A DNA stretch of 64,000 nt from Macrostomum lignano (lineage: Eukaryota): assembly GCA_002269645.1 (NCBI GenBank), contig NIVC01000202.1:620001-684000 (forward strand), written 5' to 3'. The position numbers were made by a program, and so were the translations under genes. Positions within the stretch are counted from its first letter, which is position 1. Every line of letters starts with the position of its first letter. Shown here one piece after another: positions 6,619-59,109 of the stretch. A model generated the notes under the pieces. It made no database searches, was not told where the DNA came from, and saw nothing but the letters and a program-made list of their open reading frames with translations.

Positions 6619-6650
6619 AACTAAGGAACCTCCCTGTTGCACGCCTTCAG
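6619..6650 (+). promoter_or_regulatory. 3' splice acceptor (candidate trans-splice site) directly before CABIN1 codon 2
   Basis: Branch-like aactaa (6619-6624), pyrimidine-rich tccctgttgcacgccttCAG, then CTC CGA ATA GCC GCT TTG AAC GCG = LRIAALNA. In-frame TAA at 6618-6620 and no ATG before it. Confidence 0.75.
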
Positions 6651-9600
6651 CTCCGAATAGCCGCTTTGAACGCGGCGCCGCCGCAGGCGCCCACAAGCTC
6701 GGCGTCATCGGCATCTGGAGCTGTGCAGGCCAAGCAGCACCATCAGCATAGCAACAAGCAGCAGCACAGGCACCAGTCAAACCATGCCTCATCGTCGGCT
6801 AATTCCTCCGCTATGGATGAATCTGCTGTCGCGTCGGGCACTCGCGAAACCGAGGAGGCGCTTGTGACGCGCAGTTTTCAGCGCGCGCTTGCGCGTCTAG
6901 CGCAAATTGGCGCCGGCTCCGGCAGCGACAGCGGCGGCCCCGCAGTTGAAGAGGCCATGCGCTCTCTCGAGGCCATCACTGCTAGCCGGATCTTCCTTGA
7001 CGGTCCCGCGGCTGCTCACCTATCCGAGCACCTGCGCCAGATCCTCGCCAGCTGCCACCGTCAGCTCGGTCAGCATCACTGCTGGGCTAGGCGGTTCGAC
7101 CTCGCCGTGCGCCATCTTTCAGCCGCTGTCGAGGCCGATCCGCGCGACATCGCGGCCGCCTTTCACCTGGCCTGGTCGGCCTACCTCAGCTGCGACCTGC
7201 GCTTGGCCGCCTCCGCATTGCGCGCCTGTTTGAAATTAAATCCCGACCATCTGCCGGCTCTGGATCTCAGCCTGTCTGTTGCTTATTGTATGGGCGAGCC
7301 AGAGACTTGGCTAGCCGCCTGCGGTCGGCTGCTGGACCGCCTTCCGAGCCACCGTCGGGCGGCCTTCTGCGTTGCCGAGTATCTGCGCTGCGCACCGTCA
7401 GCTTCAAACTGCCTGCCAGCGGGCTCCGCCCTGGCCAAGCTGGCTGCAGCGATTCAGTTGAAAACTGTAGATGAGAGCGAGTGGGAGGCTGATAGGAAAG
7501 AGTTGATGGCTGTGCGAGCGGAGCATCAGGTGAATGTTTCATCTGTTTATTGGTTCGTCTGTAAGCGTCCAGCTACAGACTCATTAGGCTCCAGCTAGAG
7601 ACTCATTAAGCTAATGCTACAGACTCATTAAGCTAATGCTACAGACTCATTAAGCTAATGCTACAGACTCATTAAGCTAATGCTACAGACTCATTAAGCT
7701 AATGCTACAGACTCATTAAGCTAATGCTACAGACTCATTAAGCTAATGCTACAGACTCATTAAGCTAATGCTACAGACTCATTAAGCTAATGCTACAGAC
7801 TCATTAAGCTAATGCTACAGACTCATTAAGCTAATGCTACAGACTCATTAAGCTAATGCTACAGACTCATTAAGCTAATGCTACAGACTCATTAAGCTAA
7901 TGCTACAGACTCATTAAGCTAATGCTACAGACTCATTAAGCTAATGCTACAGACTCATTAAGCTAATGCTACAGACTCATTAAGCTAATGCTACACTCCC
8001 AAAACCGATACTGCAGGCGCGAACAAATCCACAGTCTGCCGAAGCAGCCGCCGCGAAGCCGTCAGTGCCGGAACTCGTGCCAGTTAGCCCGACGGAAGCC
8101 TCCAATTGGACTGCAATGGCGGCTCTGCTCGAGCAACTGTGCGTGACTTCAACAGTTGACGATGCAGACAGCTGGGGCAGCTGCCGAGCCTACAGGCTGA
8201 TCCGCCTGGTGCCCGCAGCGCTGGTTTCGGAGTCCGATGATCAGCTGCCTGCTGTCCAGGATGATGAAGCTTCTGAGCCTTCTCCGCCGCCTCCGCTGGC
8301 TACTCCCGCATCGTCCGCTGAGCTGACCTCGATAGCAAAGTCTTCAACGGCCAGTCTGGGCCAGGCCTTCCCGGCTGAGCTGCTGTGCAGTCGCCGGTCC
8401 AACCGCTTGGCTGCCGCCTCCGCCAATTCCGCTTCCGCTTCCGCTAGCGGCGGCGGCGACTCGACCGCTGAGGACTCCGACGACGATGACGACGAACTGG
8501 CAGCTGCCGCTGGCTCGTCTGACGCCGCCTCGGCTGCCGCGGCGGTTGCCGATCGACTTCAGCGACTGCTGGACGCCTCCGGCCGCTGCTGCTTGCCCAG
8601 CTGCGTTCGCCGACTGTCGGGCGTTTACTTTGCTAGACGCTACTGCGCCGGCCGCAGCGGCGGCAGCTCCGACGATGACAACGACAATGACGGCGATTGT
8701 GAAGCTGATGCCGCCGCTTCCGCTGCATTGGCGGCTGTCCAGCTGTTGAGCCCGTTCCGGCTGGACGAGCTCCTTTCTCGACTGTCCGAGTCTGCCGAGC
8801 TGTACACCCCCGCCGACGCCGCCGCCGTGTTCTGCGGCCTCCTCGCCGAACAGTTCGAACTCCGCTGGCCCGCTGAATTGCTTGCAGCTTTCCTCCGCCT
8901 AAGCGGGCCGCGCCTCGGCATTCTGGCCGACAATCCGAACGTGTCCGTCAGCGGGTTGCACTGCCTGCCAGCCGAGTCGCTCTGTCTGGTGGCCCTGGCT
9001 CACCTGGAGCTCCGATTGGACCGTCGCCGCGTCAAGGATGCCGCCAATTGGGTGAGCACTGATCTCAGCTGGCCAAATTTGGAGTCTCTGGCGCACTCGA
9101 TCGCCTGCCTGCTGTTGCGCCTGGCGTCGCCGCCGGCTCGTCTGCTGCTGCGCCTGGCCTGGGCCCGGCTGCGGCTCTCCGCCGCGTGTCGGCGCGGACT
9201 GGACGATCAGGCGGCGTTCGGCTACCTGGCGGCCGGCCTGGACTCGCCGCTGGTCTCGCCCAACTCGCCCGACTGGCCAGTTGTCAACTTGGCGGCTCTC
9301 CGTCGGCTGCGTCGGGCAGCCAAATCTGGTCGCGAGTTCGCGCTGGCCTCCGCTGCCGCTCGGTCGGGCAACTCGGCCGCCGTGGTGGCCGCTCTTCGAC
9401 CGGCTTTGTACGCTCGCGAGCGCTGCAGCGATGCGGCTTCAACTGCTGAAATCAGTGCTGAACGGGCCAGGTGTGACATCTTAGTTAATTAGCTATCTTA
9501 TCCTGTCCCTGTAACACCTGAACAGTCTTGCCCGTAATAAAACCCTTTGAAAAATCCCTAAATATTAAGCTGTAACACCCCCAAAATCACTCCTGTATGC

Positions 9601-39200: not shown

Positions 39201-42200
39201 CATGGGATTACAGGTATGGGATTCTAGGTATGGGATTCTAAGCATGGGATTACAGGTATGGGATTCTAGGTATGGGATTTTAAGCATTGGATTACAGGGC
39301 ATGGGTTTCTAAGCATGGGATTACAGGTTATGATATTCCAGGTATGGGATTTCAGGTATGGGATTCCAGGTATGGGATCCCAGGTATGGGATTCCAGGTA
39401 TGGGATTCTAGGTTTGGAATTCCAGGCTATGGAATTTAGGTATGGGATTTCAGGTATACAACAACAACAACAGAATACGCAGTTAGCGTCACAGCGTCAG
39501 GTATAACATTTCAGATAGGTATGGGTCTATGGGATTATAGGTTTGGGATTTCAAGATAGGTTTGGGATTCCAGGTTATGGGATTCCAGGGTATGGGATTC
39601 CAGTAAGTATGGGTTTTTAAGTATAAGAGATTCAAGTGTGAGATTTCCGGCGAATGACTGATTTCAGGTATGGGATTTTTTGCGACGGCTAATGCTCTTG
39701 GGAATTTAAGCTTCGGAATTTGGGATACGAGATTTTAGCCAAAATTTATCATGACTTTAGGGCTGGTGGGATTTAAGTGTGTATGCGTATGAAATGCTGA
39801 AAGTTCAGGCGCACTGACGTCAAGCAGTGGGGAATTTTGGTTGTTTAAGGCTATGGGAGAAAAAATGTTTTTTTAAAAACGCTAGCAAAATGTCAGCATA
39901 TTAGTAACGAATGCTTACTAGCCAGAAATGCAGCGTAATACTTGAGCGTAAACCTATAAACTGGGCGCTGCAATTACTAGCATATAGTTTTTTTCAATAC
40001 TAGATTATATGAAAATACTGAACCTGCTATCAAGTTTGGCTAGGCTGGCACGCGCTGAACGATCAATGTTGTGTTGACACTCATATTGCAGCTCTTTTTT
40101 AGCGGCTGAATGGCCAACCCGTTTGTTTAATTAACCTGAGTGCGTCTCTGCTACAGTGCATCCAATCACAGTGCTGATGGAGGTGGAATAGCCAACCAAA
40201 GGGCAGATTCCAGCTGGGAGCATTGGCCAGTTTGTGGGGCAGATTCCAGCTGGGAGCATTGGCCAGTTTGTGGGGCAGATTCCAGCTGGGAGCATTGGCC
40301 AGTTTGTGGGGCAGATTCCAGCTGGGAGCATTGGCCAGTTTGTGGGGCAGATTCCAGCTGGGAGCATTGGCCAGTTTGTGGGGCAGATTCCAGCTGGGAG
40401 CATTGGCCAGTTTGTGGGGCAGATTCCAGCTGGGAGCATTGGCCAGTTTGTGGGGCAGATTCCAGCTGGGAGCATTGGCCAGTTTGTGGGGCAGATTCCA
40501 GCTGGCAGCATTGGCCAGTTTGTGGGGCAGATTCCAGCTGGGAGCCTTGGCCAGTTTGTGGGGCAGAGTCCAGCTGGGAGCATGGGTAGTTTGTGGGGCA
40601 GATTCCAGCTGGGAGCATGGGTAGTTTGTGGGGCAGATTCCAGCTGGGAGCCTTGGCCAGTTTGTGGGGCAGATTCCAGCTGGGAGCATGGGTAGTTTGT
40701 GGGGCAGATTCCAGCTGGGAGCCTTGGCCAGTTTGTGGGGCAGATTCCAGCTGGGAGCATGGGTAGTTTGTGGGGCAGATTCCAGCTGGGAGCCTTGGCC
40801 AGTTTGTGGGGCAGATTCCAGCTGGGAGCCTTGGCCAGTTTGTGGGGCAGATTCCAGCTGGGAGCATGGGTAGTTTGTGGGGCAGATTCCAGCTGGGAGC
40901 CTTGGCCAGTTTGTGGGGCAGATTCCAGCTTGGAGCATTGACAAAAAACAAAATCATGCAAGCAGCCACAAGCAAGAGGCGGTAGAAATATACAAAAACG
41001 CGGCTATTTTTAAAAAGCACAGCTGCAAGCCTTTGCAGGCTTAGTAAAAACATCGAATTTCACCCGACCGAGGCCGGGTGTTTCAGAACCCCCCGCCCTT
41101 TAATCTGGCACTGTATGCTATACATATAGCTAAGCAATACTGGCTCTGAACTCCCAGATGAGAATATCGAAATCCCATGTAGGCAAGTGAGAAAAATATG
41201 GAAAAAACGGCGCTCACGCGCACGCGAAACGGCCGCAATCGAGAGAGAGCCGATTTTGTTAATCCCCTCGATCCCAGTCCCCGCCACTCCCTCACCGTCC
41301 CTCCTAGTGCAACAACATAGCCGAGCACACATAGTGGTCATTAATCATTTTGTCCAGAAAAACACCGTCTCAGCTGGATTGTTCGACGCGTGTTTTAATA
41401 ATTACTTTACTTTATTAAATTTACAGTTTTTTGTTTCATAAAAATGCATTAGTTGTTCTATCATTGATTTGAAGACTTGTAGCTTAGTTGTCAGAGCGTC
41501 GGGATTCACGACTGAAAGGTCGGGGGTTCGCTTCCCAATCCCACTCGGAACAATTTGTGTCCTTAAGCAAGACACTTAACTCTGCATTGATTCAGTTCAA
41601 CCAGTTGTAAAATTGGTGCCAGCATTAGCTGGGGTAATTGAGGGTCCTTGGACTGAACAGCCGTACGCAGCTTCAGATGCGCCGCGCAATAGCTGCGGCT
41701 GAGCTGTCGGTTGCAGGTGTAACCACTCTGAAAACCCAAAAGACCATCAGGCGCAGGGTCTCACCTTCATAGGTCGCATAATATCTTCAACCAACAGTCG
41801 CAGAGTTTCAACATAGGTCCGCTCAGTGGTCACCAGCTCTTCCATACAGATCTCCTTAGCTGATCGTTTGGCGCCAGCATCCTCAGCATTGCCGCTGACT
41901 AGAGTCTTGTTCATGATGGTCTCGTAGACTCGCTCAGCCGCGGCGTCAACATAATTGCTGCCAACAGGCTGATCGGCGGCCGTGGGGACAGCCAGATGCT
42001 GCCGCTGCTGGCTTTTCTTAGCGGTAGCCGTGGCCATCAGGTTGCAATAATCCGAGGATAAGTCCGTCACAGCGGCGGCGTCATTGCCGTTGCTACTAGT
42101 AGCAACCGTGAAGCCTTCAATGCCGCTCTGCTTAGCTCTGGGACTGTTAGACAGCAGCGACAGGGTGCGAATGATTCTGCCAACGTTCTCTTGGCTGAGC

Positions 42201-43598
42201 AGGTCGTCAGGTGAGAACAAGTCAGCTGGGGACAGGCCGAACTCTGTCTGACAAGCCGATAGGAACAGGTTGAGGTTCCGGCGGAAGGCGAATTGAGAAT
42301 TCAGCGTGGCCAGCTTGAAGCCGGGCAGCTGCTCCGGGGTCACCTGCGGGGGAGTGGGATTTGGGATACTTGGGATAGGTACAGGTCCAGGTAAGGGATT
42401 CCAGGTATGGGATTCTAGGTATGGGATTCAAAGTATTGGATTCCAGGTACAGGATTTTAAGTATGGGATTCTAGGTATGGGACGTTAGGGAATGGGATTC
42501 CAGGTATGGGATTCTAGGTATGGGACGTTAGGGAATGGGATTCCAGGTATGGGATTCAAAGTATTGGATTCCAGGTATGGGATTCAAAGTATTGGATTCC
42601 AGGTACAGGATTTTAAGTATGGGATTCTAGGTATGGGACGTTAGGGAATGGGATTCCAGGTATGGGATTCTAGGTATGGGACGTTAGGGAATGGGATTCC
42701 AGGTATGGGATTCTAGGTATGGGACGTTAGGGAATGGGATTCCAGGTATGGGATTTTAGATATGGGATTCCAGGAAATGGAATTCTAAGTATGGGATTCC
42801 AGGAAATGGGATTCTAGATATGGGATTTCAGGGAATGGGATTCCAGGTATTGGATTCTAGGCATGGGATTCCAGGGAATGGAATTCTAAGTATGGGATTC
42901 CAGGAAATGGGATTCTAGATATGGGATTTCAGGGAATGGGATTCCAGGTATTGGATTCTAGGCATGGGATTCCAGGGAATGGAATTCTAAGTATGGGATT
43001 CCAGGAAATGGGATTCTAGATATGGGATTTCAGGGAATGGGATTCCAGGTATTGGATTCTAGGTATGGGATTCCAGGGAATGGAATTCTAAGTATGGGAT
43101 TCCAGGAAATGGGATTCCAGATATGGGATTTCAGGGAATGGGATTCCAGGTATTGGATTCTAGGTATGAGATTCCAGGGAATGGAATTCTAGGTATGGGA
43201 TTCCAGGGAATGGAATTTTGAGAATGGGATTTTAAGTATGGGATTCAGGTACGGGCCGCTGCTGCGAGGATTAGAATGAGATAATTAGGATAATGAAGCC
43301 TGCTTATTAATGAAATGAAAAGCCACTGCACGTCTATTAATTTAGATTAAAAGGTTAATTTTATAACTAAATTATCGCCCACCTGCTGGGAGCTGATCGC
43401 AGGCAGAATATGACACAGCAGCACACCGTCGGTCAGGCAGTTCAGCAGGTCAACCACCGTGGCACCTGGCGTATCAACCAGCACGGACTGAGCTTGGGCG
43501 AGTATATCCGGGCAGGAGGCCAGACAGCGGAGCAACCAGTCGGCGCACATTCGCCATTCGGCATCGGCGCCGCCGAACTCGTCAACGGCTGGCATCAT
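30201..43598 (-). CDS. VAV: Vav-family Rho/Rac guanine nucleotide exchange factor (CH-acidic-DH-PH-C1-proline-rich-SH2-SH3; no N-terminal SH3), about 933 aa
   Basis: Exons 43598-43383, 42343-41765, 38906-38572, 37366-37198, 33803-33092, 31882-31402, 30510-30201 join in frame (2802 nt). CH EWRMCADWL..LTDGVLLCHIL; acidic-region tyrosines (SDYCN, SNYVD, RVYET); DH ELVTTERTYVETL..YLAVPMQRVLRYHLL..DVATYVNETKRD; PH YGRLEQDGDLR; SH2 GTYLVRES..EYAVSL; SH3 VGLFPADCV. Confidence 0.93.
30650..31330. repeat. Intronic minisatellite, 30 bp (AGAGATGCCTGGAGTCCCCGTTCCCTAATT)
   Basis: Last Vav intron. Confidence 0.97.
32050..32865. repeat. Intronic minisatellite, 30 bp (GAGAGATGCCTGGAATCCCTGTTACCCGAT), nearly invariant over 32240-32860
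   Basis: Vav intron before the SH2 exon. Confidence 0.97.
33954..34534. mobile_element. Composite/degenerate MITE of the same family as 62912-63129, with an internal 108-bp tandem duplication
   Basis: Outer inverted repeat CATGGACTTCTC.AG.TAGCATCTGGACT (33954 and 34534). Inner TIR-like pieces at ~34013 and ~34277-34325 match the 62.9-kb element. The tccagat motif recurs at 34292, 34400 and 34508. Confidence 0.6.
35020..35846. repeat. Intronic minisatellite, 16 bp (ATGACACTGCGCGCTT)
   Basis: Vav intron. Confidence 0.96.
36221..36460. repeat. (GACT)n microsatellite
   Basis: Direct reading. Confidence 0.98.
36950..37160. repeat. 15-bp minisatellite (GACATTGTGGG(C/T)ATA)
   Basis: Vav intron, next to the donor at 37197. 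Confidence 0.95.
37600..38450. repeat. 13-bp minisatellite (CCTTCAGAATGGT / CCTTTGGGATGGT)
   Basis: Vav intron. Confidence 0.93.
38975..39720. repeat. 14-15 bp minisatellite (GGGATTC(C/T)AGGTAT family)
   Basis: Vav intron 2. Confidence 0.9.
40200..40935. repeat. 35-36 bp minisatellite (GGGCAGATTCCAGCTGGGAGCATTGGCCAGTTTGTG)
   Basis: Vav intron 2. Confidence 0.97.
41478..41722 (+). mobile_element. tRNA-derived SINE, copy 3 (Vav intron)
   Basis: GTAGCTTAGTTGTCAGAGCGTC..GGGGTTCGCTTCCC..GTGTCCTTAAGCAAGACACTT..GCTGTCGGTTGCAGGTGTAA. Confidence 0.85.
42390..43250. repeat. 14-15 bp minisatellite (GGGATTCCAGGTAT family) with a 101-bp higher-order repeat
   Basis: Vav intron 1; GAATTC marker at 42881, 42982 and 43083. 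Confidence 0.93.
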
Positions 43599-43664
43599 GG
43601 CTGCGGACTGGGGCTGGCTGGGCAGCTCTGCAATCATTCATTCATTTTTATTTATCTGATGCTT

Positions 43665-47118: not shown

Positions 47119-50100
47119 TCAGCAATTAGCCGGCATGTAGATCGGATTGTGAAAGGAGGTGCCGCCACCGCCGGCAGCCAATCCCGTGGCGGCGTCCAGA
47201 TTGAGCTGCGGCCGGTAGCCGGCAGCCCAGCGGCCGCGGCGCCACAGACGGACCCCGATGACAATCAGACCGGCCAGAGCCGCTGCGCTGCACAGAGCCA
47301 GCACGACGGCGACCGCCACAGACGTCGTCGACGAATATGTCGCGTTGCCGCTATTCCCCGAGCTAGTAGGCGTTGTTGGCGTTGCAAAGCACTGAGGCAG
47401 GCTACAATAGGCCAATTGAAGTTGCAGCGCTGGCGATTGAGCCGCAGTCACAAAGCAGACTGGCGAAGATCCAACACCGACAGAAGACACATTGCGGCAA
47501 TAAGCAGCCGCAGAGCCCACAGTTTCGCTAACAAATTCATTCGCCTTCAGTCTGTCCGCGGCGGCTGCGTCGGTCTTGGCGACAAACGCTCTCGCGCCCA
47601 ATGAGCTTCGACGAGTCGCCAGAGCCACGTCCCAGCGGATACAGGCTCGACCGTCGCGAGCTTCGCCAACTAGACTGCGGCTTCGAAGACAAGTTGAGTA
47701 GTTAGGGTCGGGTGCTGGCGTAGCGACTGCCGGTTGCCCAGCAACTAACCGTTTGCAGATGTAGGCAAACTTGTCTGAGCAGTTGGTCGCTGAGCGGAGG
47801 CCCCAGCCGAGGCTGAGCGAGTAGCAGCTGGCGGCGGTGGACCCGGCGCTGACGGCGGCAGGCGTCAGGTGGCCGACAGCTACGGCCGGATAGAGCAGGT
47901 CGGAGCGCAATGGCCGACTGTCCGAGCGCCAACTCCAATTGCCTCCTTGGCTGGTCAGGCCCAGCCAGACTTCGCTACCAACGCTGATGGCAGCTGATCG
48001 CAGAAAGTGCAACTCGGCCGACTGGGCAAAGCCGCCCTGCTCAAGCTCGAGTAGCTGTCTGCTGCTGGCCGAACTATTGAGGCTTCTACAGGCTGCCTGA
48101 GCATCGGCGAACGTGGCAACGCTGTCAGCTGATCTGAATTCGTAGCAGGCGGAGCCAAACCGGGCAAACTTAGACGGACAGCCGGCGGAAGATGCCGGAG
48201 GGGCGACCGCGACGGGTACGCCGCTGACTCGACAGAGTGGGCGAAGTTTCTTTGAGCACTGCTCGGTGCTCATGTGGCCGGATAGCCACCAGTAGGGGCT
48301 GCTACTGAGCCGTACGCAGTCGTATTTCTAGATTGATGTTTATAAATACACGGTTGTCGAACAAAGACTAAACAAAGAGTGTTGATTTAAATCAATATTC
48401 AACGAATATATACTACTAAAGTATAAGGCCGCTCTGTGAAGTAAAATCCGTCTACAACTGTCTTTTTAGAAGCTCGAAACTTCACAAGCTCGAAACTTTA
48501 CAATCAAAATCTAGAAACTTCACAATCAAAATCTAGAAACTTCACAATCAAAATCTCGAAACTTTACAATCAAAATCTAGAAACTTCACAATCAAAATCT
48601 CGAAACTTCACAATCACAGGCTCGAAACTTCACAATCAAAATCTCGGAACTTCACAATCAAAATCTCGAAACTTCACAATCACAATCTCGAAACTTCACA
48701 ATCAAAATCTAGAAACTTCACAATCACAGGCTGGAAACTTCACAATCACAGGCTCGAAACTTCACAATCACAGGCTCGAAACTTCACAATCACAGGCTCG
48801 AAACTTCACAATCACAGGCTCGAAACTTCACAATCACAGGCTCGAAACTTCACAGTCACAGGCTCGAAACTTCACAATCACAGGCTGGAAACTTCACAAT
48901 CACAGGCTGGAAACTTCACAATCACAGGCTGGAAACTTCACAATCACAGGCTGGAAACTTCACAATCACAGGCTGGAAACTTCACAATCACAGGCTGGAA
49001 ACTTCACAATCACAGGCTCGAAACTTCACAATCACAGGCTCGAAACTTCACAATCACAGGCTCGAAACTTCACAATCACAGGCTCGAAACTTCACAGTCA
49101 CAAGCTGGAAACTTCACAATCGATTTCATTCTACATTACTTTTCAGCATTTCTACAAATAATTGCTTTAAAAAACATGCAAATCAAACGCCGACAATGGC
49201 AATAATGTCAATATCTATTGCCCGATGCAAAGTAGGTACCTAGGTCGCTTAATTCGCCTCAGAGTCGTTTAAGTAACACAGGTAAAATAGGAAAGAAGTG
49301 ACTCTAGTAGACGATTCTAAAACGACGAGACGTCCCGGTTGTCAAGTCGCTAAAAATTCGTCAAAGAGTCGCGTATGAGTTAATTGCAGTCAGGCCACAG
49401 AGTCATATCTGAGGCGTGCTGGAGTCGCTGTGGAATCACTGAGTTGCGTCTAAAGTGCACCTGCGTCACTTTATGAATTCAAATCTAATTTCGCATTTAT
49501 AACAAACTGTGAGGAAAAAATTTGAAATCAGAAATAATAATCATTCAAACTGGGGCGCATTAAACAATCAAGGCATTCATTTAAATTTTATAATCGTTAT
49601 TACTAATAGCTATTGCAATTACTGCTCTACACTCATAGCTCGGAGTTCGGCAAATACAGTTAACTTATAATTAAATTTCTACTACTTATATCCTTGGTAA
49701 GTAGTATGTGTGATTAATTTATGAGGTTACGCGTTGATGAACACTGGGTTATTCTGAAAATACATATTTGTACCGACAATACGGGGGCAATTTAAGTGGA
49801 TTTCAGTAAATAGATAAATTTAATACCCTATCAATGGCTATATATGTTTTCATTTTTTCAGCACAAAAATTGCTATTGCTTTCGATAGGAGGCAGGTCCA
49901 ATGTTCATCTTTAGATATGTTGCGTCTTTCTTATAGTTCTATTGATATTCATAAAGCTTTTTGTTCAGAAAACATTGTATATGTCTTGTGCCTAAAAACT
50001 ATTAAAATGGCACAGCTCGACTCTGGTTTTATGAATCTATCTTATCATCTCTGTTACACACATTGTTACACAGTTAGCTAAGAATAAAAGAGATTCATAA

Positions 50101-53100
50101 AACCAATGAGCCGAGCCGTGCCATTTCAATAGTAAATGCCGTGCTAGACTGTTTGCTTCTATCTGAGCTTGACTCCTATCTGTTGTTTGTTTGCTTTTAA
50201 AAGCGCTACTAGAATTCGGATTTCTAAACCTACTTCTAGTAGCGTTTTGTAAACCGGCTCTTCTGCTTTCGGAAGCGGTTCTAAAAGTTTCATTGTACTT
50301 TTAGAAACGTTCCTATTAAATTTGTAACAAAATTTCGCTTTCTGATTGTAGAAGCGCTTTAAGAATTAAGTGAAGTTGATAGATCAAGCAGTCGTCCTTA
50401 CCTGAGTATCGGCAAAAGCGGCCCAGTCCGTGGCCAGTACCGGCCGGCCGTCTGTCCAACCAAAGACTCCGCCCTCGAGGCCAGCTTTAAATTCCAATCC
50501 AATCCAGGCTGATTGTGGATTCAATAAAGAGGACTCGCGATTAGCGGCCTCCGCTAAGAGGCTGGCCATGCGCTGCAGCTGAGCCTGAGTCTGATAGGAG
50601 GCCAACTGAGCACTGGAATGGCTAGCTTTGCACTCGGCCTCGGCTTGCGGATATGGAACTGCGGTTGGCAACAGTCGATAGCAGGCGCTATCAGTTGACG
50701 ACGCGGCTACGAAGCCGTCGGGACAAGCGTAAGTTTGCCGCCCGGCTGGCTCAGGCGCTGCTGTAGACAGTCTATCGAATAGCCTGGACCGTTTGCACAG
50801 GAATGCCTGCCGAGTGTTGCAATCCATAGACCAGAACTGGCCTGGATACTTCGAATCCGGCCTGGTTTCCATAGCAACGCATAGAGACTTGGCTAGATCT
50901 ACTGACTGATCTGGCGGATTATCTAGCGGTATAAAATCTGCAAATCGCATGGGACTACCGTCCGACCACGCCGAGTAGGCATTAGCAACCGGGCTCAGAC
51001 TGGTGCTAGCGCCAAGCCAAACTTTGTCAGCGCTGAACTGCTTCAAGAATGTGAATACAGCCTTCGATTCGTTCATCGAACCAATAGAAGCCAATTGGCC
51101 AGCATTGCTCCAGTGTTTCTGGCAGATATTATTGGCATCCTGCCATGACTGTTTAGCTCCGGAATCCGTTTTGTCAACAAACAAATATTCCAAGCAACCG
51201 GAACCGTCTGGCATCGGTATAGACAGCTCGTTTGATTTGTCATCGGGCGATTTACAGACTGGTCTATCTCCGCCACCGCCGCTACTACTACCAGTAGTGT
51301 GACTAACTGGAGTTTTAGCAGGCGCTGTTGTACCAACGGTACTGCTATTGTTAGAAGCTGCAGTGGGCGTCACAGTCGTAGTAGTCGATGCTATACTACT
51401 AGCAGTAGTAGTAGTGGAACTTGTCAAAGTTGACGTAGTCAAAGGCAGGCCGGGAGTCTGACAGATGTATGGCAACGTTTTTGAGCAGACTTCCGTCATC
51501 CATTCGCCATATTTTCCACTGATAGAAACGCACGCCTTAGTATTGAAAGGCATGCTAAGCGGTAGCTTGGGATAGCCGTGACGGAATTGGAAAAACTGGA
51601 CTCCAGTGCCGCCATCTTCCGACCAGATCAAATGCTGCTGGCCTTCCACAAACGAAACGGTCATGCCTAGCCAAGCTTCATCTGATGGTGAAAGATTCTT
51701 AAGCTTCTTACTGATAACCAGCTGCTCCTGGCGGCTGTGCACGCTGGCTAGACTGCCACCGACTTTGGCGCAGGCGGCATCCGCGTCAGTCCAGTTGGCA
51801 TTAGTATTATACAGTTTATAGCATTTTCCGTTAACTGCCGGTTCCTCACCGTCTGGACAGCGCAAATTCTGGCTCTTGTTAGGCGAAAACGGATGATCAA
51901 CCAGATTGTAGCGGCACGCCATCAAAGGGTCCGTGTCGTTGCATAGCCGGGCCTCCAGACTGTTGGACTGCAGGTTCAATGCTGTGCACAGGTAGCGCTG
52001 AGTGTCCGAATTCTGGTAGTGAGAAATATGAGGTTAAATAATAAGTATGTGCTACCAGCGTAGAAGCAGATAACGGAGACCTGATGGAGCAGAAAGTTTT
52101 TCGAGATGCTGGAGAAAAAATGACAGAGCAGCACTCAGGGATGCTGGAAACCGAAGATTAAAAAAACTAGTATTGAAAGCAGATGATGGAGTAATAAAAA
52201 TAAAATCTCGGATTCTAGAAGCAGATGATGGAGCAGAAAATCTGTGATGGTGGAAACAGATGATGAGCAGGAAATCTGGGATGCTGGAAACAGATTATGG
52301 AGCAGGAACTCTGGGATGCTGGAAGCAGATGATGGAGCAGGAAATCTGGGATTCCGGAAGCAGATGATGGAGCTGAAGTCAGAAAGCATGCTGCGTACCA
52401 GTAGCACAAAAAACAAACATTTTCAACAAATAATAACAATACAAATAAAAATAAAAATGACCAACCTTTAGCTGAGTGGGCAGAATCTTAAACACAAAAT
52501 CATAGTCAGCCGAGCTGCCATCGTCCCAGGTGAGCAGCCAGCCGTGTTTGCTTTCGTCTGGCTCAACGTTGAGCCCCAGCCAGACAGCCGGGCCGTTTGT
52601 CAAGTTGACGCCAAGCTGATCGGCCAGAGCAGATAGGAAGGCCTGCTCACCTCGATGGTGGAACAGGGCCAAGCTGGCGTTCTGGTTGGCGCACTCGGCG
52701 GCCATGTCCGAGCGGTTGCCATTGGTCCCGGCAGCCAGAGTCCAGCAGATGTCGCCGTAGGCATAGAAACCCGGACGGCAGCGGCTGGCGGGACTACTGT
52801 GAAGGATGCCGATAGGCGATGGCACATGGCTTGTGTTAAGCTTGCTAGGCGGCGCCTGGCACAGGGCGGAGAAGAATCTGTCTGTGCAGGGTACGTTGTT
52901 CCACTCGCCTGGAATTATAATGATAGTAATGTTTATTAGATCGTATAGTCTTATTGCAATATTTACCATGGAATTTTAGCCAAATTCTATAGCTTTTCTG
53001 ACATCTCTAGGGAAGGTGAAACCACAGTTGCTATGCAGAACTAAGCTACCTGTATCTCTATGGAAGGTGAAACCACAGTTGCTATGCAGAACTAAGCTAC

Positions 53101-55245
53101 CTGTATCTCTATGGAAGGTGAAACCACAGTTGCTATGCAGAACTAAGCTACCTGTATCTCTATGGAAGGTGAAACCACAGTTGCTATGCAGAACTAAGCT
53201 ACCTGTATCGCTATGGAAGGTGAAACCACAGTTGCTATGCAGAACTAAGCTACCTGTATCTCTATGGAATGTGAAACCACAGTTGCTATGCAGAACTAAG
53301 CTACCTGTATCTATCTCTATGGAAGGTGAAACCACAGTTGCTATGCAGAACTAAGCTACCTGTATCTCTATGGAAGGTGAAACCACAGTTGCTATGCAGA
53401 ACTAAGCTACCTGTATCGCTATGGAAGGTGAAACCACAGTTGCTATGCAGAACTAAGCTACCTGTATCTCTATGGAATGTGAAACCACAGTTGCTATGCA
53501 GAACTAAGCTACCTGTATCTATCTCTATGGAAGGTGAAACCACAGTTGCTATGCAGAACTAAGCTACCTGTATCGCTATGGAAGGTGAAACCACAGTTGC
53601 TATGCAGAACTAAGCTACCTGTATCTCTATGGAAGGTGAAACCACAGTTGCTATGCAGAACTAAGCTACCTGTATCTCTATGGAAGGTGAAACCACAGTT
53701 GCTATGCAGAACTAAGCTACCTGTATCGCTATGGAAGGTGAAACCACAGTTGCTATGCAGAACTAAGCTACCTGTATCGCTATGGAAGGTGAAACCACAG
53801 TTGCTATGCAGAACTAAGCTACCTGTATCTCTATGGAATGTGAAACCACAGTTGCTATGCAGAACTAAGCTACCTGTATCTCTTTAGAAGGTGAAACGCG
53901 GCGCATCTGAAGGCTGCGTACGGCTGTTCAGTCCAAGGACTGGGGGGGGGGGTCGCCACACAGCCTCAATTACCCCAGCTAATGCTGGCACCCATTTTAC
54001 AGCTGGGTGAACTAAAGCAATGCATAGCAATGCAACTAAGCAATGCATAGAGTGTCTTGCTTAAGGACACAAACTGTTCCAGTGGAATCGGGAAACGAAC
54101 CCCCGACCTTCAAGTCGTAAGTCCGACCGCTCTGACCACTAGGCTACAACCTCCTTTGTATCTGTATGGAAGGTGAAGCCGCAGTTGCTATGCAAAATTA
54201 AGCTACTTGCGTCTCTAAAGTGCAACCGCAATTGCTTTGCAGAGATTTTACATTACAACCAGCTAGGCTCACCTAAGCTAACCTCCCGCTGATGCGCCAC
54301 AACGCAGGACTCTGTCTTAAACGGCGTAGACGGTTCGCCCAGTTTCCAATCGCTGTGCCGCATATCGCCGGTGCCGTTGACCTGCCAGGCCCAGTACTTA
54401 TCGGGCATGTACTCCAAGCTGATCCAGGCGTGTCCATGAGCCGTCGATCCGATTAGGGCCGTGGCTAGGAATTGCGTATTAAAATCGTTAATAACAGCTA
54501 AACTAGCCTCGGCCGACCAGTTCCTGCAGGCTTGAACAGCCAAGTCCCTATCGAATTTATCAGCTGGGGAACTTTTTGGCGAATTCAGCACCCGGTAGCA
54601 GAGGCCGCGATGCAGAGTGGCGTTGGCGCCGTCGCATCGAAGCTTCGAATCGAACTGCACCGAGTCTCTATAGGGCGACTGGATCGGCTGTCTAGCGCAC
54701 AGGGCCGCCGAACTGTTAGTGGAACCATCGATGAAGTTCAGTTTCAGAATCGAGTTGTCAATCAGTTTCAAGGCGCCGTGACGACCGCTGTAGCGAGACA
54801 GTACGGGAGTTGCGCCAGGCAGCTTGGACATGGAAAAGTCGGTGTAGTTAGCGTCCAGCCACTCCAGGCTGACCAGATCAGTGACGCGAGCCCCAGTCCA
54901 GTAGCTAGCTGAGAGCTCAGTAGTAGTGGCATTGGTCTCATTGCGACTGCTCAGCAATGCGCTAAGCAACAATTCATTGAACTGCTGATTGCGCAAGAAG
55001 ATCAATCTGCTATTGTTGCCAAGGGATAGGCAGTACTGGCGAGCCTGGCTAATGTTGAGCGGAGCCTGGCCAATCAGAATGCAGTCAGTCTGGCCAACAG
55101 GCAGCCAGCCGTCCTGGCAGCTTGGCCGGGACTCGGCAATTTGTACCAGCTGGCAAGCGATTAAAACGGTTAATAGGGCCAGCAGGCTGATGGCGCCTCG
55201 GGGAGTCTGGGGAGCAAGGCAGAGATGCTGAATAGACAGAGTCAT
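47119..55245 (-). CDS. Mannose-receptor-like type I membrane protein: signal peptide, 7 C-type lectin-like domains, Ser/Thr stalk, kringle, TM helix, FxNPxY tail (up to about 1411 aa)
   Basis: Exons 55245(or 55227/55206)-54273, 52908-52466, 52012-50402, 48327-47119 join in frame. Repeated CTLD pattern C..W..A...C....LAS(I/V)....WIG..W.DG..C..W...C....ICK; kringle-like C..G.A.DGRACIRW..YCRN..PVCF..YCSLPQC; TM VAVAVVLALCSAAALAGLIVIGV; tail SFHNPIY. True start uncertain. Confidence 0.88.
48470..49120. repeat. 22-bp minisatellite (CTTCACAATCACAGGCTCGAAA)
   Basis: Last intron of the lectin receptor. Confidence 0.96.
49240..49400. mobile_element. Degenerate copy of the 55714-55911 element
   Basis: Co-linear similarity over ~110 nt seen by eye. 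Confidence 0.5.
52070..52380. repeat. Degenerate tandem repeat (GCAGATGATGGAGCAGGAAATCTGGGATGCTGGAA)
   Basis: Lectin receptor intron 2. Confidence 0.75.
53005..53896. repeat. 51-bp minisatellite, about 17 units
   Basis: CTAAGCTACC marker at 53041 and 53092; lectin receptor intron 1. Confidence 0.97.
53897..54154 (-). mobile_element. tRNA-derived SINE, copy 4, 3'-truncated, at the edge of the 51-bp array
   Basis: Same family; lacks the terminal gcaaccgacagctc..attg block. Confidence 0.85.
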
Positions 55246-55288
55246 TGTAGCGACAAATTAATCACAGTTTAATAGGGGCTCAAATCAG

Positions 55289-55294
55289 TTTATT
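55289..55294 (-). promoter_or_regulatory. Polyadenylation signal overlapping the COPS9 stop codon
   Basis: Minus strand reads GCC TAA ATAAA; AATAAA shares the last A of the stop. Confidence 0.55.
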
Positions 55295-58229
55295 TAGGCA
55301 AGATCTTCGTCATCGAATAGGTCACCAAAATCTGCAATGGGATAGCGGGAGAGTGTAAGCGGATTAGCTCGATGAAAACGCTACTTAGGCCAATAAATAA
55401 TATAATAATAACTGATTACACCTGCTCTAACGGGCAGATGTGCAACCGACAGCTCAACCGCAGCTATTGCGCGGCGCATCTGAAGGCTGCGTACGGCTGT
55501 TCAGTCCAAGGACTGGGGGGGGGGGGTCGCTACACACCCTCAGTTACCACAGCTAATGCTGGCACCAATTTTACAGCTGGGTGAACTGAAGCAATTCAGA
55601 GTTAAGTGTCTTGCTTAAGGACACAAATTGTTCCAGTGGGTTCGGGAATCGAACCCCCCGACCTTCAAGTCGTGAGTCTGACGCTCTAACCACTGGGCTA
55701 GGCCAGGAAGCGTCCCAGAGTCGCTTGTGCAGCCCTAGAGTCGTTGCAGGTAGCACAGGTAAAATAAGAAGTAAGTGAATCTAGCTAGACGACTCTTAAA
55801 CGACGAGATGTCTCGTACAAGTCACCAAAAAGTCGTCAAAGAATCGCCTCAAAGTCTTATTTTGAGTCCTTTTATTGTCTGCGTCTCTAGGGCGACGCAA
55901 GTGACCCTGGGTGCTTCTATAATGATTAACATGTAAAGTGTAGCTACATCTTTAGCGACTCTTACGATCCTACAATTCTCAGTCACTTGAGTCGTTAAAA
56001 AGTCACACAAGGGTCGCCACAAAATTGCTAGAATTACTAGAAGTCATTTGGAATGGCTCCTTAGCAATACTTGTCACCGTGTCACGGTAACGTTTTCTTA
56101 AACGGGTTGTGCACAAAAATTGGCCCAGGGGGCGTAAACGCTCACACGTGTACACCCTGTGTGAGCATTTACGTGCTCAGGGGTCAGCAGAATGGGCATG
56201 ACTACAAAGAAACAGATTCACTAGCACTAAATTAATCGAAGCTGTGAAGCGAACATGTTCTTTCACAAAACGAATTGCAGAGTAAAATAAATAACTAGTT
56301 CGCAAAGCAGTTACCGTTGTTAAAGTCGGAGTGCACAATTTTCTCGCTGCTGGGATAATCAAAGGCCAGGTTGCCACTGCGGCCGTCGCTTACCTGAAGT
56401 GATTTTATTAAATTATAATTGATAATTAATAAAAAGCAACATCTGTAAAGATAAGAAGGCCATATCATATGATAAACACTAATAACTAGACATCTGGACT
56501 GCACATCAGTGTCTAATTAATTAATTTCAGAGAACTTATAAAATCAAATGGCATTGCATTATATTTAGCTAAAGAAATATCTAAAACACAAGCGAAATCT
56601 AATTGACTAATCAACAAACCATTCCTAAAGGACTTTATAACTTTGATAATATCCCAATTTTTATATAAAATAACTTCTATTATTTTAGTGATTATGATAT
56701 TTTCTCTCTATCAACACCATTCATTTCTTTCCACATGTCTTAAATCTACATGCTAAAAATTTTTTTTTCTACTTTTTCCATATTTACTGCAATGCCATAA
56801 GCAAGACTTTAATACTAATTTGGCTATGTGAATGATATTTTAATAGATATTTTGACATTGTAGGTCTAAAAAATAAATATGTCATGATAATTATAACCAT
56901 AAGATTAAATTCCTATTTTTTTACTTTTCTAAGAGTTTATAGATTATAAAATAAAAAATTGCATCTTTAGCCTAGTAAAAAACCTAAAAGCCCAGGCTGG
57001 AATGTTTGCTTCAGACTTTAGACTTTACACTACAAAATCTTGTATTGAAAAAATAGATTACATAAAACATTTTTAATTATTTATGTTTAAACAGTTTTGA
57101 CTAATCTTATTTATTGCATAGGATGCACTTATAATATAATGATAAATCATAAATTTATTAGATATACAATTAGTTTCATATTAAAAAATTTTGGTATTTA
57201 AATTTTTTATCAATTGTTATGAATAGTTATGTTATAATGGAATAACTTGCATATTATTTTTATGATTTATATTTGGCTTATACAAGCATACTATGTAGAA
57301 GCATAGCTAAGGGCAAATATAAATGCTAGCATAAATTAAACCTTATAAAAAATTACAGTTCTGTCATAGCTATGGATTTGATATAGGAAGTTATAGATAC
57401 ATTGATTTTGGCCTCCAAGTTATGGATATGGATATTTTTCCCATATCCTATTCAGAACCTAGTTTTGTAACTGAAACAAAAATGTTAGTATATTTACATG
57501 CATTATAGATAAAAATGTAGCAACTCCCTTGCATGCATTTTCATTTGATTATATCATATAATCATATCATATATAATGTTATGACTATATAAATATTTGT
57601 AGTTTGAAAATATTTGGAATCATCATCTAGAATATATATATCCCCTCACCTATGCAACCATGGTAGCTATCTATGAGACTGATTTCTTGGGACTTATAAT
57701 AGGCATCTAGTTCTATGATTGTTGACAATTTGACTAGGATCTGCTACTAGGCTATAACCCATACATGTACAATACCTAGCTAAGCCAGCTAATCTAGCCA
57801 TCTAATAAAAGGCCTAGCCAAGATAAGTCACAAAAATTCCCATCAAAAATAGTACTGAAGATAATAAAATATTTAGCCCTGATAATAGGCCTACATTTGA
57901 CTCATAGTTACTACTTCCATTTACTCACAATTATGATCATTTTTGCTTAGGTGTCTTTCATAGGTAAGTCAAAAAGAAAGTTGCTTACATCAGTGCCAGT
58001 GTAAATCAGGGACAGGGGGTTATGCAGGTAGGTGGCATGTATGCTAAAGGTTATAACCTACAATTACAAACTGATTATAAATTAGGCCTTTAGGTTTAAT
58101 GATTAGAAGAAAAAAAGCAACAAAACACACTAGTTTAAGCAATCTGAACAAATATTTTACCTCAGCTGTGTTGTCAATTTCACCCATTGGATCATCAGGA
58201 AACATTTCATCAGTAGGCTTGTTAGACAT
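55294..58229 (-). CDS. COPS9: COP9 signalosome subunit 9 (CSNAP/MYEOV2), 61 aa, three coding exons
   Basis: Exons 58229-58161, 56393-56315, 55331-55294 have GT/AG sites and correct phases (0, 1; 186 nt). Product MSNKPTDEMFPDDPMGEIDNTAEVSDGRSGNLAFDYPSSEKIVHSDFNNDFGDLFDDEDLA aligns by eye with COPS9 (KPAVDEMFP...[20 protein letters not shown]). Confidence 0.88.
55392..55701 (-). mobile_element. tRNA-derived SINE, copy 5, most complete (COPS9 last intron)
   Basis: Same family, plus the extended tail ..GCACATCTGCCCGTTAGAGCAGGTGTAATC and a (TTA)n-like end. Confidence 0.85.
55714..55911. mobile_element. MITE-like element with ~27-bp imperfect TIRs (CCCAG..CTGGG); related copy at ~49240-49400
   Basis: CCAGAGTCGCTTGTGCAGCCCTAGAG versus reverse complement CCAGGGTCACTTGCGTCGCCCTAGAG. 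The core CACAGGTAAAATA..CTAG..GACGA.TCT.AAACGACGAGA is shared with 49257-49330. Confidence 0.6.
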
Positions 58230-59109
58230 TATATAATGTTAGACTATACAATGATTATTATTAATTCATTTGATAGTTAAGTGTATTGTAGCCAGGTATT
58301 AATTAGCATAGAAAAGTTTATTTGAAAGTATCAGCCAATTCAAAATATTGAATTGTTGTAAGTGTGCAATGCTGCCAATGGTAAAATAGTACTCAACCCA
58401 ATATTATACCAAAACAATAGCAAGAGAAATGAAAAATCTGGTGATACAAATTACGACTTGAATAAGAAAGTACGACCCAGCGGCGATGAACAATTACGTG
58501 TAAACGATACATACACGAACACAGTGGTGGTCAACAGGTTTAACTACTTGATTTGAAATTTCAGAGAAGGTAGTTCTAATGATGGTTAGATCTAACTTAG
58601 AGTTTTTTGTTGAGAAGCAAAACAGAATTTTTTTGTCAAATTTTACTCCTATACATTAAGACACTGCAGGTATAATTTTTTAACTACGAACGTACTAGAA
58701 TTTTGTTAGAATTATATTTGAAACGAAACTCAAGAGCGTAAACAGCCACAATTTCAGTTTTCTAATGTTAAACACAATAAAAGTCATATTGATATACATG
58801 TAGATTATGATAAATTTGCATAAAAATGCCTTCTTTCGCATAAAAAATGCGTGCATATACGTAGTATAAACAAGGACGACTTTAAGTGCATTCTCGAGAA
58901 TATTCTCACTCGAGCTTTTCATTCTCAGAATTTTTGGATCGAGAATCAGGTCGTAAGCAGTAGTTAGCTATGAAATATGATTCCAATTCGTGGAGCTATC
59001 TGCTTTTTTGAGAAACCAAAAGCAGAGCTTCAATTTGACTCTTTGCTCAAAAAAGGGCAACAGCCTTCACTCTCCCATATACATGTATTTTTTTAACTCA
59101 ATCCACAGC

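What the first reader, a model, noticed from the sequence alone, without database searches (positions are those of the whole stretch)
55200..55335. COPS9 -> lectin receptor: operon-like 48-nt gap, with SL-AUG needed to rebuild the signal peptide
Seen: the COPS9 stop (55294) overlaps AATAAA and the receptor ORF's ATG is at 55245. There is no usable AG between the expected cleavage site and that ATG. Two acceptors follow in phase 0 (TATTCAG| 55227 and CTCTGCCTTGCTCCCCAG| 55206). Trans-splicing at 55206 removes the genomic ATG; an SL ending in AUG would give MTPRGAISLLALLTVLIACQLVQIAES, a cleaner signal peptide. The next in-frame Met is far past the signal peptide. Together with CABIN1 this is a second case in one window of a downstream cistron apparently relying on the leader for its start codon.
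Basis: partly seen in the sequence, partly recalled or inferred. Interest (0 to 1): 0.85.

Follow-up and report, generated by a model that had tools for sequence, protein, structure and literature searches.

The report
Flatworm COPS9–lectin receptor operon-like junction
In the flatworm Macrostomum lignano a small housekeeping gene (COPS9) ends 48 bases before a large lectin-receptor gene, whose message probably takes its cap and perhaps its start codon from the spliced leader; this mechanism is already known in flatworms and is not proven for this gene.

Summary
The window is Macrostomum lignano scaffold NIVC01000202.1, positions 620001-684000. On the minus strand, COPS9 (3 exons, Pfam MYEOV2) stops at 55296-55294. 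AATAAA and ATTAAA follow within 29 nt. A 1411-aa, 4-exon C-type-lectin receptor ORF opens with ATG 55245.

Two acceptor-like CAGs lie in phase 0 just inside that ORF, at 55228|55227 and 55207|55206. The second has 15/18 upstream pyrimidines. A CAG with at least 14/18 occurs once in 11 kb of coding sequence here.

The M. lignano spliced leader ends in ATG, operons with about 100-bp gaps are documented, and CABIN1 in this window needs the leader's AUG: leader AUG + LRIAALNA against an ortholog's MLRICALNE, with all public models 5'-partial.

"Needed" is overstated. The genomic ATG is intact, has A at -3, and gives the same hydrophobic core with a longer n-region. No RNA evidence could be reached, and the gene is absent from the NCBI and UniProt protein sets.

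Leader-AUG initiation and flatworm operons are established (Cheng 2006; Ustyantsev & Berezikov 2021). At most this is one more unannotated instance, and existing SL-read and poly(A) tracks would settle it.

The parts
58161..58229 (-). COPS9 exon 1 (MSNKPTDEMFPDDPMGEIDNTAE, own genomic ATG at 58229, donor GTAAAA, ends in phase 0)
56315..56393 (-). COPS9 exon 2 (VSDGRSGNLAFDYPSSEKIVHSDFNN + 1 base; acceptor CACTTCAG|)
55294..55331 (-). COPS9 exon 3 coding part (DFGDLFDDEDLA, stop TAA 55296-55294)
   Evidence: Pfam MYEOV2
55289..55294 (-). AATAAA poly(A) hexamer overlapping the COPS9 stop codon
55268..55273 (-). Second poly(A)-type hexamer, ATTAAA, 23 nt after the stop
55279..55280 (-). Only AG between the COPS9 stop and the receptor ATG (TTTGAG|CCCC). 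It is a weak acceptor: GAG with 9/18 pyrimidines. A leader AUG joined here would open a 7-codon uORF ending at TAA 55260-55258.
55258..55260 (-). In-frame TAA that closes the receptor reading frame upstream, 4 codons before the ATG
   Evidence: read from the sequence
55243..55245 (-). Genomic ATG of the receptor ORF (context CTACAATGA, A at -3)
55228..55241 (-). Candidate 3' splice site 1: CTCTGTCTATTCAG|, next base 55227, phase 0, 12/18 pyrimidines. It matches TNCAG of the M. lignano trans-acceptor motif.
55207..55224 (-). Candidate 3' splice site 2: CTCTGCCTTGCTCCCCAG|, next base 55206, phase 0, 15/18 pyrimidines
55129..55206 (-). Signal-peptide coding stretch TPRGAISLLALLTVLIACQLVQIAES (h-region ISLLALLTVLIA, A-E-S|R cleavage motif)
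54273..55245 (-). Lectin receptor exon 1 (donor TTAG|GTGAGC, phase 1)
52466..52908 (-). Lectin receptor exon 2
50402..52012 (-). Lectin receptor exon 3
47119..48327 (-). Lectin receptor exon 4 (last C-type lectin domain, TM segment, cytoplasmic tail, stop)
6644..6653 (+). Context: CABIN1 trans-splice acceptor CCTTCAG|CTC. The first codon after the AG is in phase 0 and there is no genomic ATG. This is the in-window precedent for a leader-donated AUG.

Best explanation
COPS9 and the C-type-lectin receptor form a two-gene, operon-like unit in Macrostomum lignano.

- Transcription starts upstream of COPS9, in the AT-rich block above 58229, and runs through both genes.
- The COPS9 mRNA is cleaved and polyadenylated a few to about 40 nt after its stop, directed by AATAAA and/or ATTAAA.
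- The downstream RNA is capped by trans-splicing of the 35-nt leader (...TTGCATG) to one of two pyrimidine-rich CAG acceptors at 55228|55227 or 55207|55206.
- Both acceptors lie downstream of the genomic ATG and in phase 0. The leader's terminal AUG therefore becomes the initiator, giving M-HLCLAPQTPRGAISLL... or M-TPRGAISLL... with a signal peptide of 34 or 27 residues.

Shown: the anatomy, the reading phases, the acceptor quality, the species, the leader sequence, and the CABIN1 precedent.

Inferred: co-transcription, use of these acceptors, and translation from the leader AUG.
For: (1) Species and leader. CABIN1 in the window is PAA88095.1 on NIVC01000202.1 of M. lignano. The M. lignano leader is CGGTCTCTTACTGCGAAGACTCAATTTATTGCATG.

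(2) Operon statistics for this species. About 30% of genes are trans-spliced and 15% lie in operons. The intergenic mode is about 100 bp, and 18% of operons start with a gene that is not trans-spliced. Here the COPS9 stop is 87 nt from base 55206.

(3) Two poly(A) hexamers lie within 29 nt of the stop, against about 1 per kb in the background.

(4) Acceptor quality.
- The 55207 site has 15/18 pyrimidines plus CAG. That equals or beats 11 of the 12 real acceptors in the window.
- Among 606 AGs inside coding exons, 2 reach 15/18.
- A CAG with at least 14/18 occurs once in 11 kb of coding sequence.
- The 55228 site (12/18, TTCAG) is typical of real acceptors.
- The only upstream AG (55279) is a GAG with 9/18, worse than every real site.

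(5) Both sites are in phase 0. After them there is no ATG in any frame for 229 nt, and none in frame for 126 codons.

(6) CABIN1 in the same window requires the leader AUG.

(7) The leader AUG is an experimentally shown initiator in flatworms (Cheng 2006) and is noted as a likely start codon in Macrostomum.
Against: - No RNA evidence of any kind was obtainable.
- The genomic ATG at 55245 is intact, is the first ATG after an in-frame stop, has A at -3, and yields a workable though long (39-aa) signal peptide. Leader dependence is therefore not forced by the sequence.
- Both acceptors match the published [T/C]TNCAG motif at only 5 of 6 positions.
- The receptor is absent from the NCBI and UniProt M. 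lignano protein sets, although CABIN1 and CLC from the same scaffold are present. This argues against strong co-expression with a housekeeping gene.
- Five other genes in the window have no AATAAA or ATTAAA within 400 nt of their stops, so hexamer use in this species is uncertain.
- The acceptor statistics are post hoc and come from one window.
Confidence: 0.55

Rival explanations
1. Conventional start. The mature receptor mRNA keeps the genomic ATG at 55245 and translation begins there (MTLSIQHLCLAPQTPRGA...). The 5' end would come either from an independent capped TSS inside or just after COPS9, or from trans-splicing at the weak upstream AG (55279|55278). In the second case the leader AUG opens a 7-codon uORF (MPLLNCD*) that ends 12 nt before the real ATG. 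The two inner CAGs would then be coincidental or minor sites.
For: - The ATG is intact, has A at -3, and lies 4 codons after an in-frame stop, with the ORF continuous.
- The h-region and the cleavage motif are the same.
- In flatworms most leader AUGs are not in frame with the ORF: 28% in frame in S. mansoni. Nearby genomic AUGs are often available.
- TATA-like TAAATAAA and TATTAAA lie 23-51 nt upstream of the ATG.
Against: - At most 48 nt is available for a promoter-proximal 5' UTR, and COPS9 3'-end signals occupy the same bases.
- The 55279 acceptor is a GAG with 9/18 pyrimidines, poorer than all 12 real acceptors.
- Two strong in-phase acceptors within 39 nt of the ATG would have to be chance (expected 0.004 for the stronger one).
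- An in-frame ATG within the 17 open codons of an outron is not rare (about 0.2 by my estimate), so its presence is weak evidence.
- A 39-aa signal peptide is unusually long.
Confidence: 0.27
2. Mixed use. Both the genomic ATG form and one or two leader-AUG forms are made, giving N-terminal signal-peptide isoforms with n-regions of 18, 13 or 6 aa from one gene. The locus may be an intermediate in handing the start codon over to the leader.
For: - All three starts are in one frame and share the h-region.
- Tandem acceptors lie 21 nt apart.
- Many M. lignano transcripts have multiple trans-splice sites.
- Flatworm acceptors are widely shared between cis- and trans-splicing.
Against: No data on any isoform. 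The mature protein is identical after signal-peptide cleavage, so any functional difference would be subtle.
Confidence: 0.1
3. The inner CAGs serve cis-splicing from COPS9 donors (exon 1, phase 0) or from an unrecognised upstream non-coding exon. This would produce read-through or chimeric transcripts rather than a leader-initiated mRNA. Alternatively, the receptor is essentially silent.
For: - The COPS9 exon 1 donor and both acceptors are in phase 0.
- Chimeric cis-spliced models across operon genes are common in flatworm annotations.
- The gene is missing from public protein sets.
Against: - A 23-aa acidic COPS9 prefix would spoil the signal peptide.
- The COPS9 exon 2 donor is in phase 1, so it is out of frame.
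- The receptor ORF is intact over 4 exons and 1411 aa, which argues for function.
Confidence: 0.08

Closest known systems
[quoted passage not shown]
   Same: The leader ends in AUG. The acceptor is in phase 0 with the main ORF. No nearby downstream AUG exists, so the leader AUG is required once that acceptor is used.
   Different: Here a usable in-frame genomic ATG sits 13 or 6 codons upstream of the acceptors, so dependence is conditional on which acceptor is used. Leader addition at this site has not been observed. The first residues form a signal peptide, not a conserved N-terminus that could be checked against orthologs.
Macrostomum lignano operons resolved by SL trans-splicing (Wudarski 2017, PMC5730564; Ustyantsev & Berezikov 2021, PMC8629364)
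   Same: Same species. Same-strand neighbours. The gap falls in the ~100-bp mode. The upstream gene has its own ATG and may not be trans-spliced. The acceptors are CAG.
   Different: This pair is not in the public protein annotation I could reach. The downstream gene is a lineage-specific receptor, not a conserved housekeeping or neoblast gene, which is the class enriched among trans-spliced genes.
C. elegans SL2-type and SL1-type operons
   Same: The order of elements: a poly(A) signal, a short intercistronic region, then a trans-splice acceptor. The 55279 alternative resembles SL1-type operons, where the cleavage site and the acceptor abut.
   Different: M. lignano has a single leader with no SL2 specialisation. 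The nematode leaders do not end in AUG and do not donate the start codon.
Alternative trans-splice sites that change or remove signal peptides in trypanosomes (Nilsson et al. 2010, PMC2916883)
   Same: The choice of acceptor relative to in-frame ATGs changes the N-terminal targeting sequence.
   Different: There the leader gives no AUG. Here the leader would restore the start, so the signal peptide is shortened and not lost.
CABIN1 in the same window (6651 +)
   Same: A phase-0 acceptor of similar make-up (CCTTCAG|, 14/18 pyrimidines) in the same genome.
   Different: CABIN1 has no genomic ATG at all, and its N-terminus aligns with orthologs right up to the acceptor. Leader dependence there is forced by the sequence, which is not so for the receptor.

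Membership tests
SL-resolved flatworm operon | Host organism performs SL trans-splicing and has operons | tested here: met
   Window = M. lignano NIVC01000202.1. Species data are in PMC8629364 and PMC5730564.
SL-resolved flatworm operon | Adjacent genes on the same strand with a short intergenic distance (<=300 bp to <=1 kb, mode ~100 bp) | tested here: met
   48 nt from stop to ATG and 87 nt from stop to base 55206, both on the minus strand.
SL-resolved flatworm operon | Trans-splice acceptor motif [T/C]TNCAG at the 5' end of the downstream gene | tested here: inconclusive
   ATTCAG (55228) and CCCCAG (55207) each match 5 of 6 positions. Their pyrimidine tracts equal or exceed those of real acceptors in the window.
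SL-resolved flatworm operon | Leader sequence found on the downstream mRNA at that acceptor | not testable with these tools
   No transcript or read data were reachable.
SL-resolved flatworm operon | Polycistronic precursor spanning both genes | not testable with these tools
   Needs RNA-seq or RT-PCR.
Leader-AUG-initiated ORF (Cheng 2006 type) | Leader ends in AUG immediately before its donor site | tested here: met
   The published M. lignano leader ends ...TTGCATG, followed by GTAAG. It was not found in the window itself.
Leader-AUG-initiated ORF (Cheng 2006 type) | Acceptor in phase 0 with the main ORF | tested here: met
   Both 55227 and 55206 are in phase 0.
Leader-AUG-initiated ORF (Cheng 2006 type) | No alternative AUG that could give the complete N-terminus on the trans-spliced mRNA | tested here: met
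   The next in-frame Met is 126 codons downstream and the first ATG in any frame is 229 nt downstream. This holds only if the acceptor used is 55227 or 55206.
Leader-AUG-initiated ORF (Cheng 2006 type) | No genomic in-frame ATG available upstream, or N-terminal homology running up to the acceptor | tested here: not met
   An in-frame genomic ATG at 55245 with A at -3 precedes both acceptors. No orthologs were found to judge the N-terminus. CABIN1, by contrast, meets this feature.
COPS9 / MYEOV2 | About 57-61 aa protein matching Pfam PF15004 above its cut-off, with an acidic C-terminal DLFDD motif | tested here: met
   E=3e-11, 44 bits against a cut-off of 27, residues 6-59.
Multi-CTLD type I membrane receptor (mannose-receptor-like architecture) | N-terminal signal peptide, several C-type lectin domains, one TM segment, short cytoplasmic tail | tested here: met
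   6 Lectin_C stretches (E=6.6e-62). The TM segment VAVAVVLALCSAAALAGLIVIGV is followed by a 45-aa tail. Orthology to any named receptor was not shown, and there is no FNII or ricin domain.

The most novel reading that the evidence does not exclude
The receptor gene is a dual-start gene caught between two modes. It has a still-functional genomic ATG plus two in-frame leader acceptors just downstream. Acceptor choice, or promoter versus operon expression, would then set the length of the signal-peptide n-region (18, 13 or 6 aa) and the cap type (m7G or TMG). That would give a regulated switch in translation or ER-targeting efficiency, and a snapshot of how start codons migrate from genes to the leader in flatworms.
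Probability: 0.12. Interest if true: 0.4.

Novelty: new member of a known kind. Interest (0 to 1): 0.2.

Why it matters
If confirmed, this adds one unannotated M. lignano operon and one more gene whose start codon comes from the spliced leader. Here the leader AUG would begin a signal peptide.

The practical value is for annotation.
- Gene finders that demand a genomic ATG will give this receptor 12 spurious N-terminal residues (or 6 if the 55227 acceptor is used).
- The same finders leave CABIN1 '5'-partial', as all three public CABIN1 models are.

It does not open a new mechanism. Leader-AUG initiation and flatworm operons have been described since 2006 and 2017-2021.

Tried and rejected
1. 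Homology searches with receptor exon 1 and with COPS9 returned nothing.

2. Exact-product look-ups found nothing for the last-exon ORF and the exon-1 ORF. No transcript contigs or homeologous copy of the junction could therefore be fetched.

3. The homeologous scaffold NIVC01000343.1 was reached only around CABIN1. There it is 97-98% identical, so a comparison at the junction would have had little power anyway.

4. Rfam and ARAGORN found nothing: no SL RNA gene and no tRNA. The M. lignano leader is not in the window.

5. Supplementary tables of the M. lignano papers hold no per-gene trans-splicing or coordinate data.

6. Two ideas were rejected.
- A fusion of COPS9 exon 2 to the receptor is out of frame, because that donor is in phase 1.
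- The 55279 AG as the main acceptor is unlikely, because it is a GAG with a purine-rich tract.

7. I considered that the AATAAA might be chance in AT-rich DNA. Two hexamers within 29 nt argue against that. However, five other genes here lack hexamers, so signal usage remains uncertain.

8. SignalP was not available. Only hydropathy, n-region length and (-3,-1) heuristics were applied.

Full report
**What is there**

Reading the minus strand confirms every coordinate in the finding.
- COPS9 ends with ...DFGDLFDDEDLA, stop TAA at 55296-55294.
- AATAAA (55294-55289) overlaps that stop. A second hexamer, ATTAAA, follows at 55273-55268.
- The next ORF on the same strand opens 4 codons after an in-frame TAA (55260-55258), with ATG at 55245-55243, 48 nt after the COPS9 stop.
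- Only three AG dinucleotides lie between the stop and 55200: TTTGAG| (55279), TATTCAG| (next base 55227) and CTCTGCCTTGCTCCCCAG| (next base 55206). The last two are in phase 0 with the ORF.

**The two genes**

COPS9 has three exons: 58229-58161, 56393-56315 and 55331-55294. They splice to a 61-aa protein that matches Pfam MYEOV2 (PF15004) at E=3e-11, above the curated cut-off. It has its own genomic ATG.

The downstream gene splices cleanly from four exons: 55245-54273, 52908-52466, 52012-50402 and 48327-47119. All junction phases are consistent. The product is an intact 1411-aa protein with a signal peptide, six Lectin_C stretches (E=6.6e-62), a Ser/Thr-rich stalk, one TM segment and a 45-aa tail.

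**Whose genome**

A full HMMER scan with the CABIN1 first exon gave a 100%-identical hit. The cluster look-up names it PAA85158.1 / PAA88095.1 of Macrostomum lignano. The contig look-up places the window at NIVC01000202.1:620001-684000 of assembly GCA_002269645.1, Mlig_3_7.

This matters because of what is published for M. lignano:
- It has a single 35-nt spliced leader, CGGTCTCTTACTGCGAAGACTCAATTTATTGCATG, which ends in ATG.
- About 30-39% of its genes are trans-spliced and about 15% lie in operons.
- The intergenic mode in operons is about 100 bp.
- The trans-acceptor motif is [T/C]TNCAG (PMC8629364, PMC5730564).

The leader's terminal AUG is an established initiator in flatworms:
- Cheng et al. 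2006, as summarised in PMC9851317 and PMC12582326.
- Echinococcus data in PMC3510090.
- It is flagged as the likely start codon in Macrostomum (PMC10468722).

**The CABIN1 precedent**

At 6650|6651 (+ strand) the acceptor CCTTCAG| is followed in phase 0 by LRIAALNAAPPQ. An in-frame TAA lies 11 codons upstream, and the first in-frame ATG is about 54 codons downstream.

A CABIN1 ortholog from the library begins MLRICALNE and another begins MAPAKIKALND. From memory, human CABIN1 begins MIRIAALNA. Leader AUG + LRIAALNA therefore reproduces the conserved N-terminus exactly.

All three public M. lignano models lack a Met and are marked partial. The homeologous scaffold has the same acceptor and no ATG.

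**Do the receptor's inner CAGs look like real splice sites?**

I mapped 11 cis acceptors (CABIN1 from PAA88095.1, plus COPS9 and the receptor) and the CABIN1 trans acceptor.
- They carry 10-16 pyrimidines in the 18 nt before the AG. Ten of the twelve (nine of the eleven cis sites plus the trans site) are CAG and none is GAG.
- The 55207 site (15/18, CAG) equals or beats 11 of the 12.
- The 55228 site (12/18, TTCAG) is typical.
- The 55279 site (9/18, GAG) is worse than all of them.

Inside 11 kb of coding sequence from this window, only 2 of 606 AGs reach 15/18. Only one CAG reaches at least 14/18, so 0.004 are expected in the 39 nt after the ATG. These numbers are post hoc, but they make a chance origin of the 55207 site unlikely.

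The two poly(A) hexamers within 29 nt of the stop also exceed the background of about 1 per kb.

**What is not shown**

The genomic ATG is perfectly usable. It is the first ATG of the ORF and has A at -3. It encodes the same hydrophobic core (ISLLALLTVLIA) and the same A-E-S|R cleavage motif. It only lengthens the n-region from 6 (or 13) to 18 residues and the whole signal peptide from 27 (or 34) to 39 residues.

So 'cleaner signal peptide' is fair, but 'needed' is conditional on the acceptor actually used. If an inner acceptor is used, the leader AUG is indispensable: there is no ATG in any frame for 229 nt and none in frame for 126 codons.

An in-frame ATG somewhere in the 17 open codons of an outron would arise by chance roughly one time in five (my estimate). 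Its presence therefore weighs little either way.

I could not reach any RNA evidence.
- The receptor and COPS9 are absent from the protein collection. COPS9 is probably below the ORF-length threshold used in annotation. The receptor's absence hints at low expression.
- The papers' held supplements carry no per-gene data.

Five other genes in the window show no canonical hexamer within 400 nt of their stops, so poly(A) signal usage in this species is not uniform.

**Verdict**

The most likely reading (about 0.55) is an SL-resolved two-gene unit. In it the receptor mRNA begins at 55227 or 55206 and is translated from the leader AUG.

The rivals are:
- A conventional start at 55245, through an independent TSS or the weak 55279 acceptor with a 7-codon leader uORF (about 0.27).
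- Mixed use (about 0.10).
- Cis-spliced chimeras or a silent gene (about 0.08).

Whatever the outcome, this is an instance of mechanisms already described for flatworms and for this very species. Public SL-read, T-fill and RAMPAGE tracks could decide it at once. Interest is therefore low. The main value is as an annotation correction and as a reminder that ATG-dependent gene models mis-start or truncate leader-initiated genes in flatworms.

Noticed in passing
window 6644-6700 (+); L002 ~9990-10010: CABIN1 has no genomic start codon. The acceptor CCTTCAG| is followed in phase 0 by LRIAALNA, which with the leader AUG matches ortholog N-termini (MLRICALNE). All three public M. lignano models are 5'-partial, and the homeolog on NIVC01000343.1 is the same.
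   Followed up: yes
55705-55400 (-), 54146-53897 (-), 14591-14331 (-), 26503-26255 (-), 41480-41715 (+): Five copies of a ~260-300-nt tRNA-derived SINE, 82-88% identical (head GGCCTAGCCCAGTGGTTAGAGCG...GGTTCGATTCCCGAACC). They sit in introns of COPS9, the lectin receptor and CABIN1, and in other non-exonic stretches. Neither ARAGORN nor Rfam calls them.
   Followed up: partly
whole window, e.g. 2674-4984, 53003-53897, 28796-30121, 11561-12698: Almost every intron or intergenic stretch carries a long minisatellite (period 14-75 nt, up to 145 copies). These create most of the long spurious ORFs in the six-frame list.
   Followed up: partly
10479-10752 (+): A 24-nt tandem array lies inside a CABIN1 coding exon (GTGQASEA repeats). 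The NCBI model PAA88095.1 skips 72 nt (10612-10683), which is three units. This suggests a copy-number difference between transcript and assembly, or a mis-called intron.
   Followed up: partly
58229-58250 (-): An AG lies 15 nt upstream of the COPS9 ATG: TTGTATAG|TCTAACATTATATAATGTCTAAC. The hexamer TCTAAC follows both the AG and the ATG. A leader AUG joined there would give the uORF MSNII*, overlapping the real ATG (TAATG).
   Followed up: no
after the stops at 16018 (+), 47119 (-), 31398 (-), 26070 (+), ~5225 (+): No AATAAA or ATTAAA lies within 400 nt downstream of the stops of CABIN1, the lectin receptor, the Vav-like gene, the nAChR-like gene and CLC, in contrast to COPS9.
   Followed up: no
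20900-26072 (+), 47119-55245 (-), 55294-58229 (-): The nAChR-like gene, the 1411-aa lectin receptor and COPS9 appear to have no model in the NCBI annotation of this scaffold. Only CLC and CABIN1 are listed in the 30 kb inspected, and the receptor and COPS9 proteins are absent from the protein collection.
   Followed up: partly
43347-43637 (-): The first exon of a Vav-like RhoGEF (CH-DH-PH-C1-SH2 gene, 43637-31398) has ordinary genomic ATGs (MIAELPSQ...EWRMCADWLLRC). It lies 3.5 kb downstream of the receptor stop, so not every gene on this strand depends on the leader.
   Followed up: no
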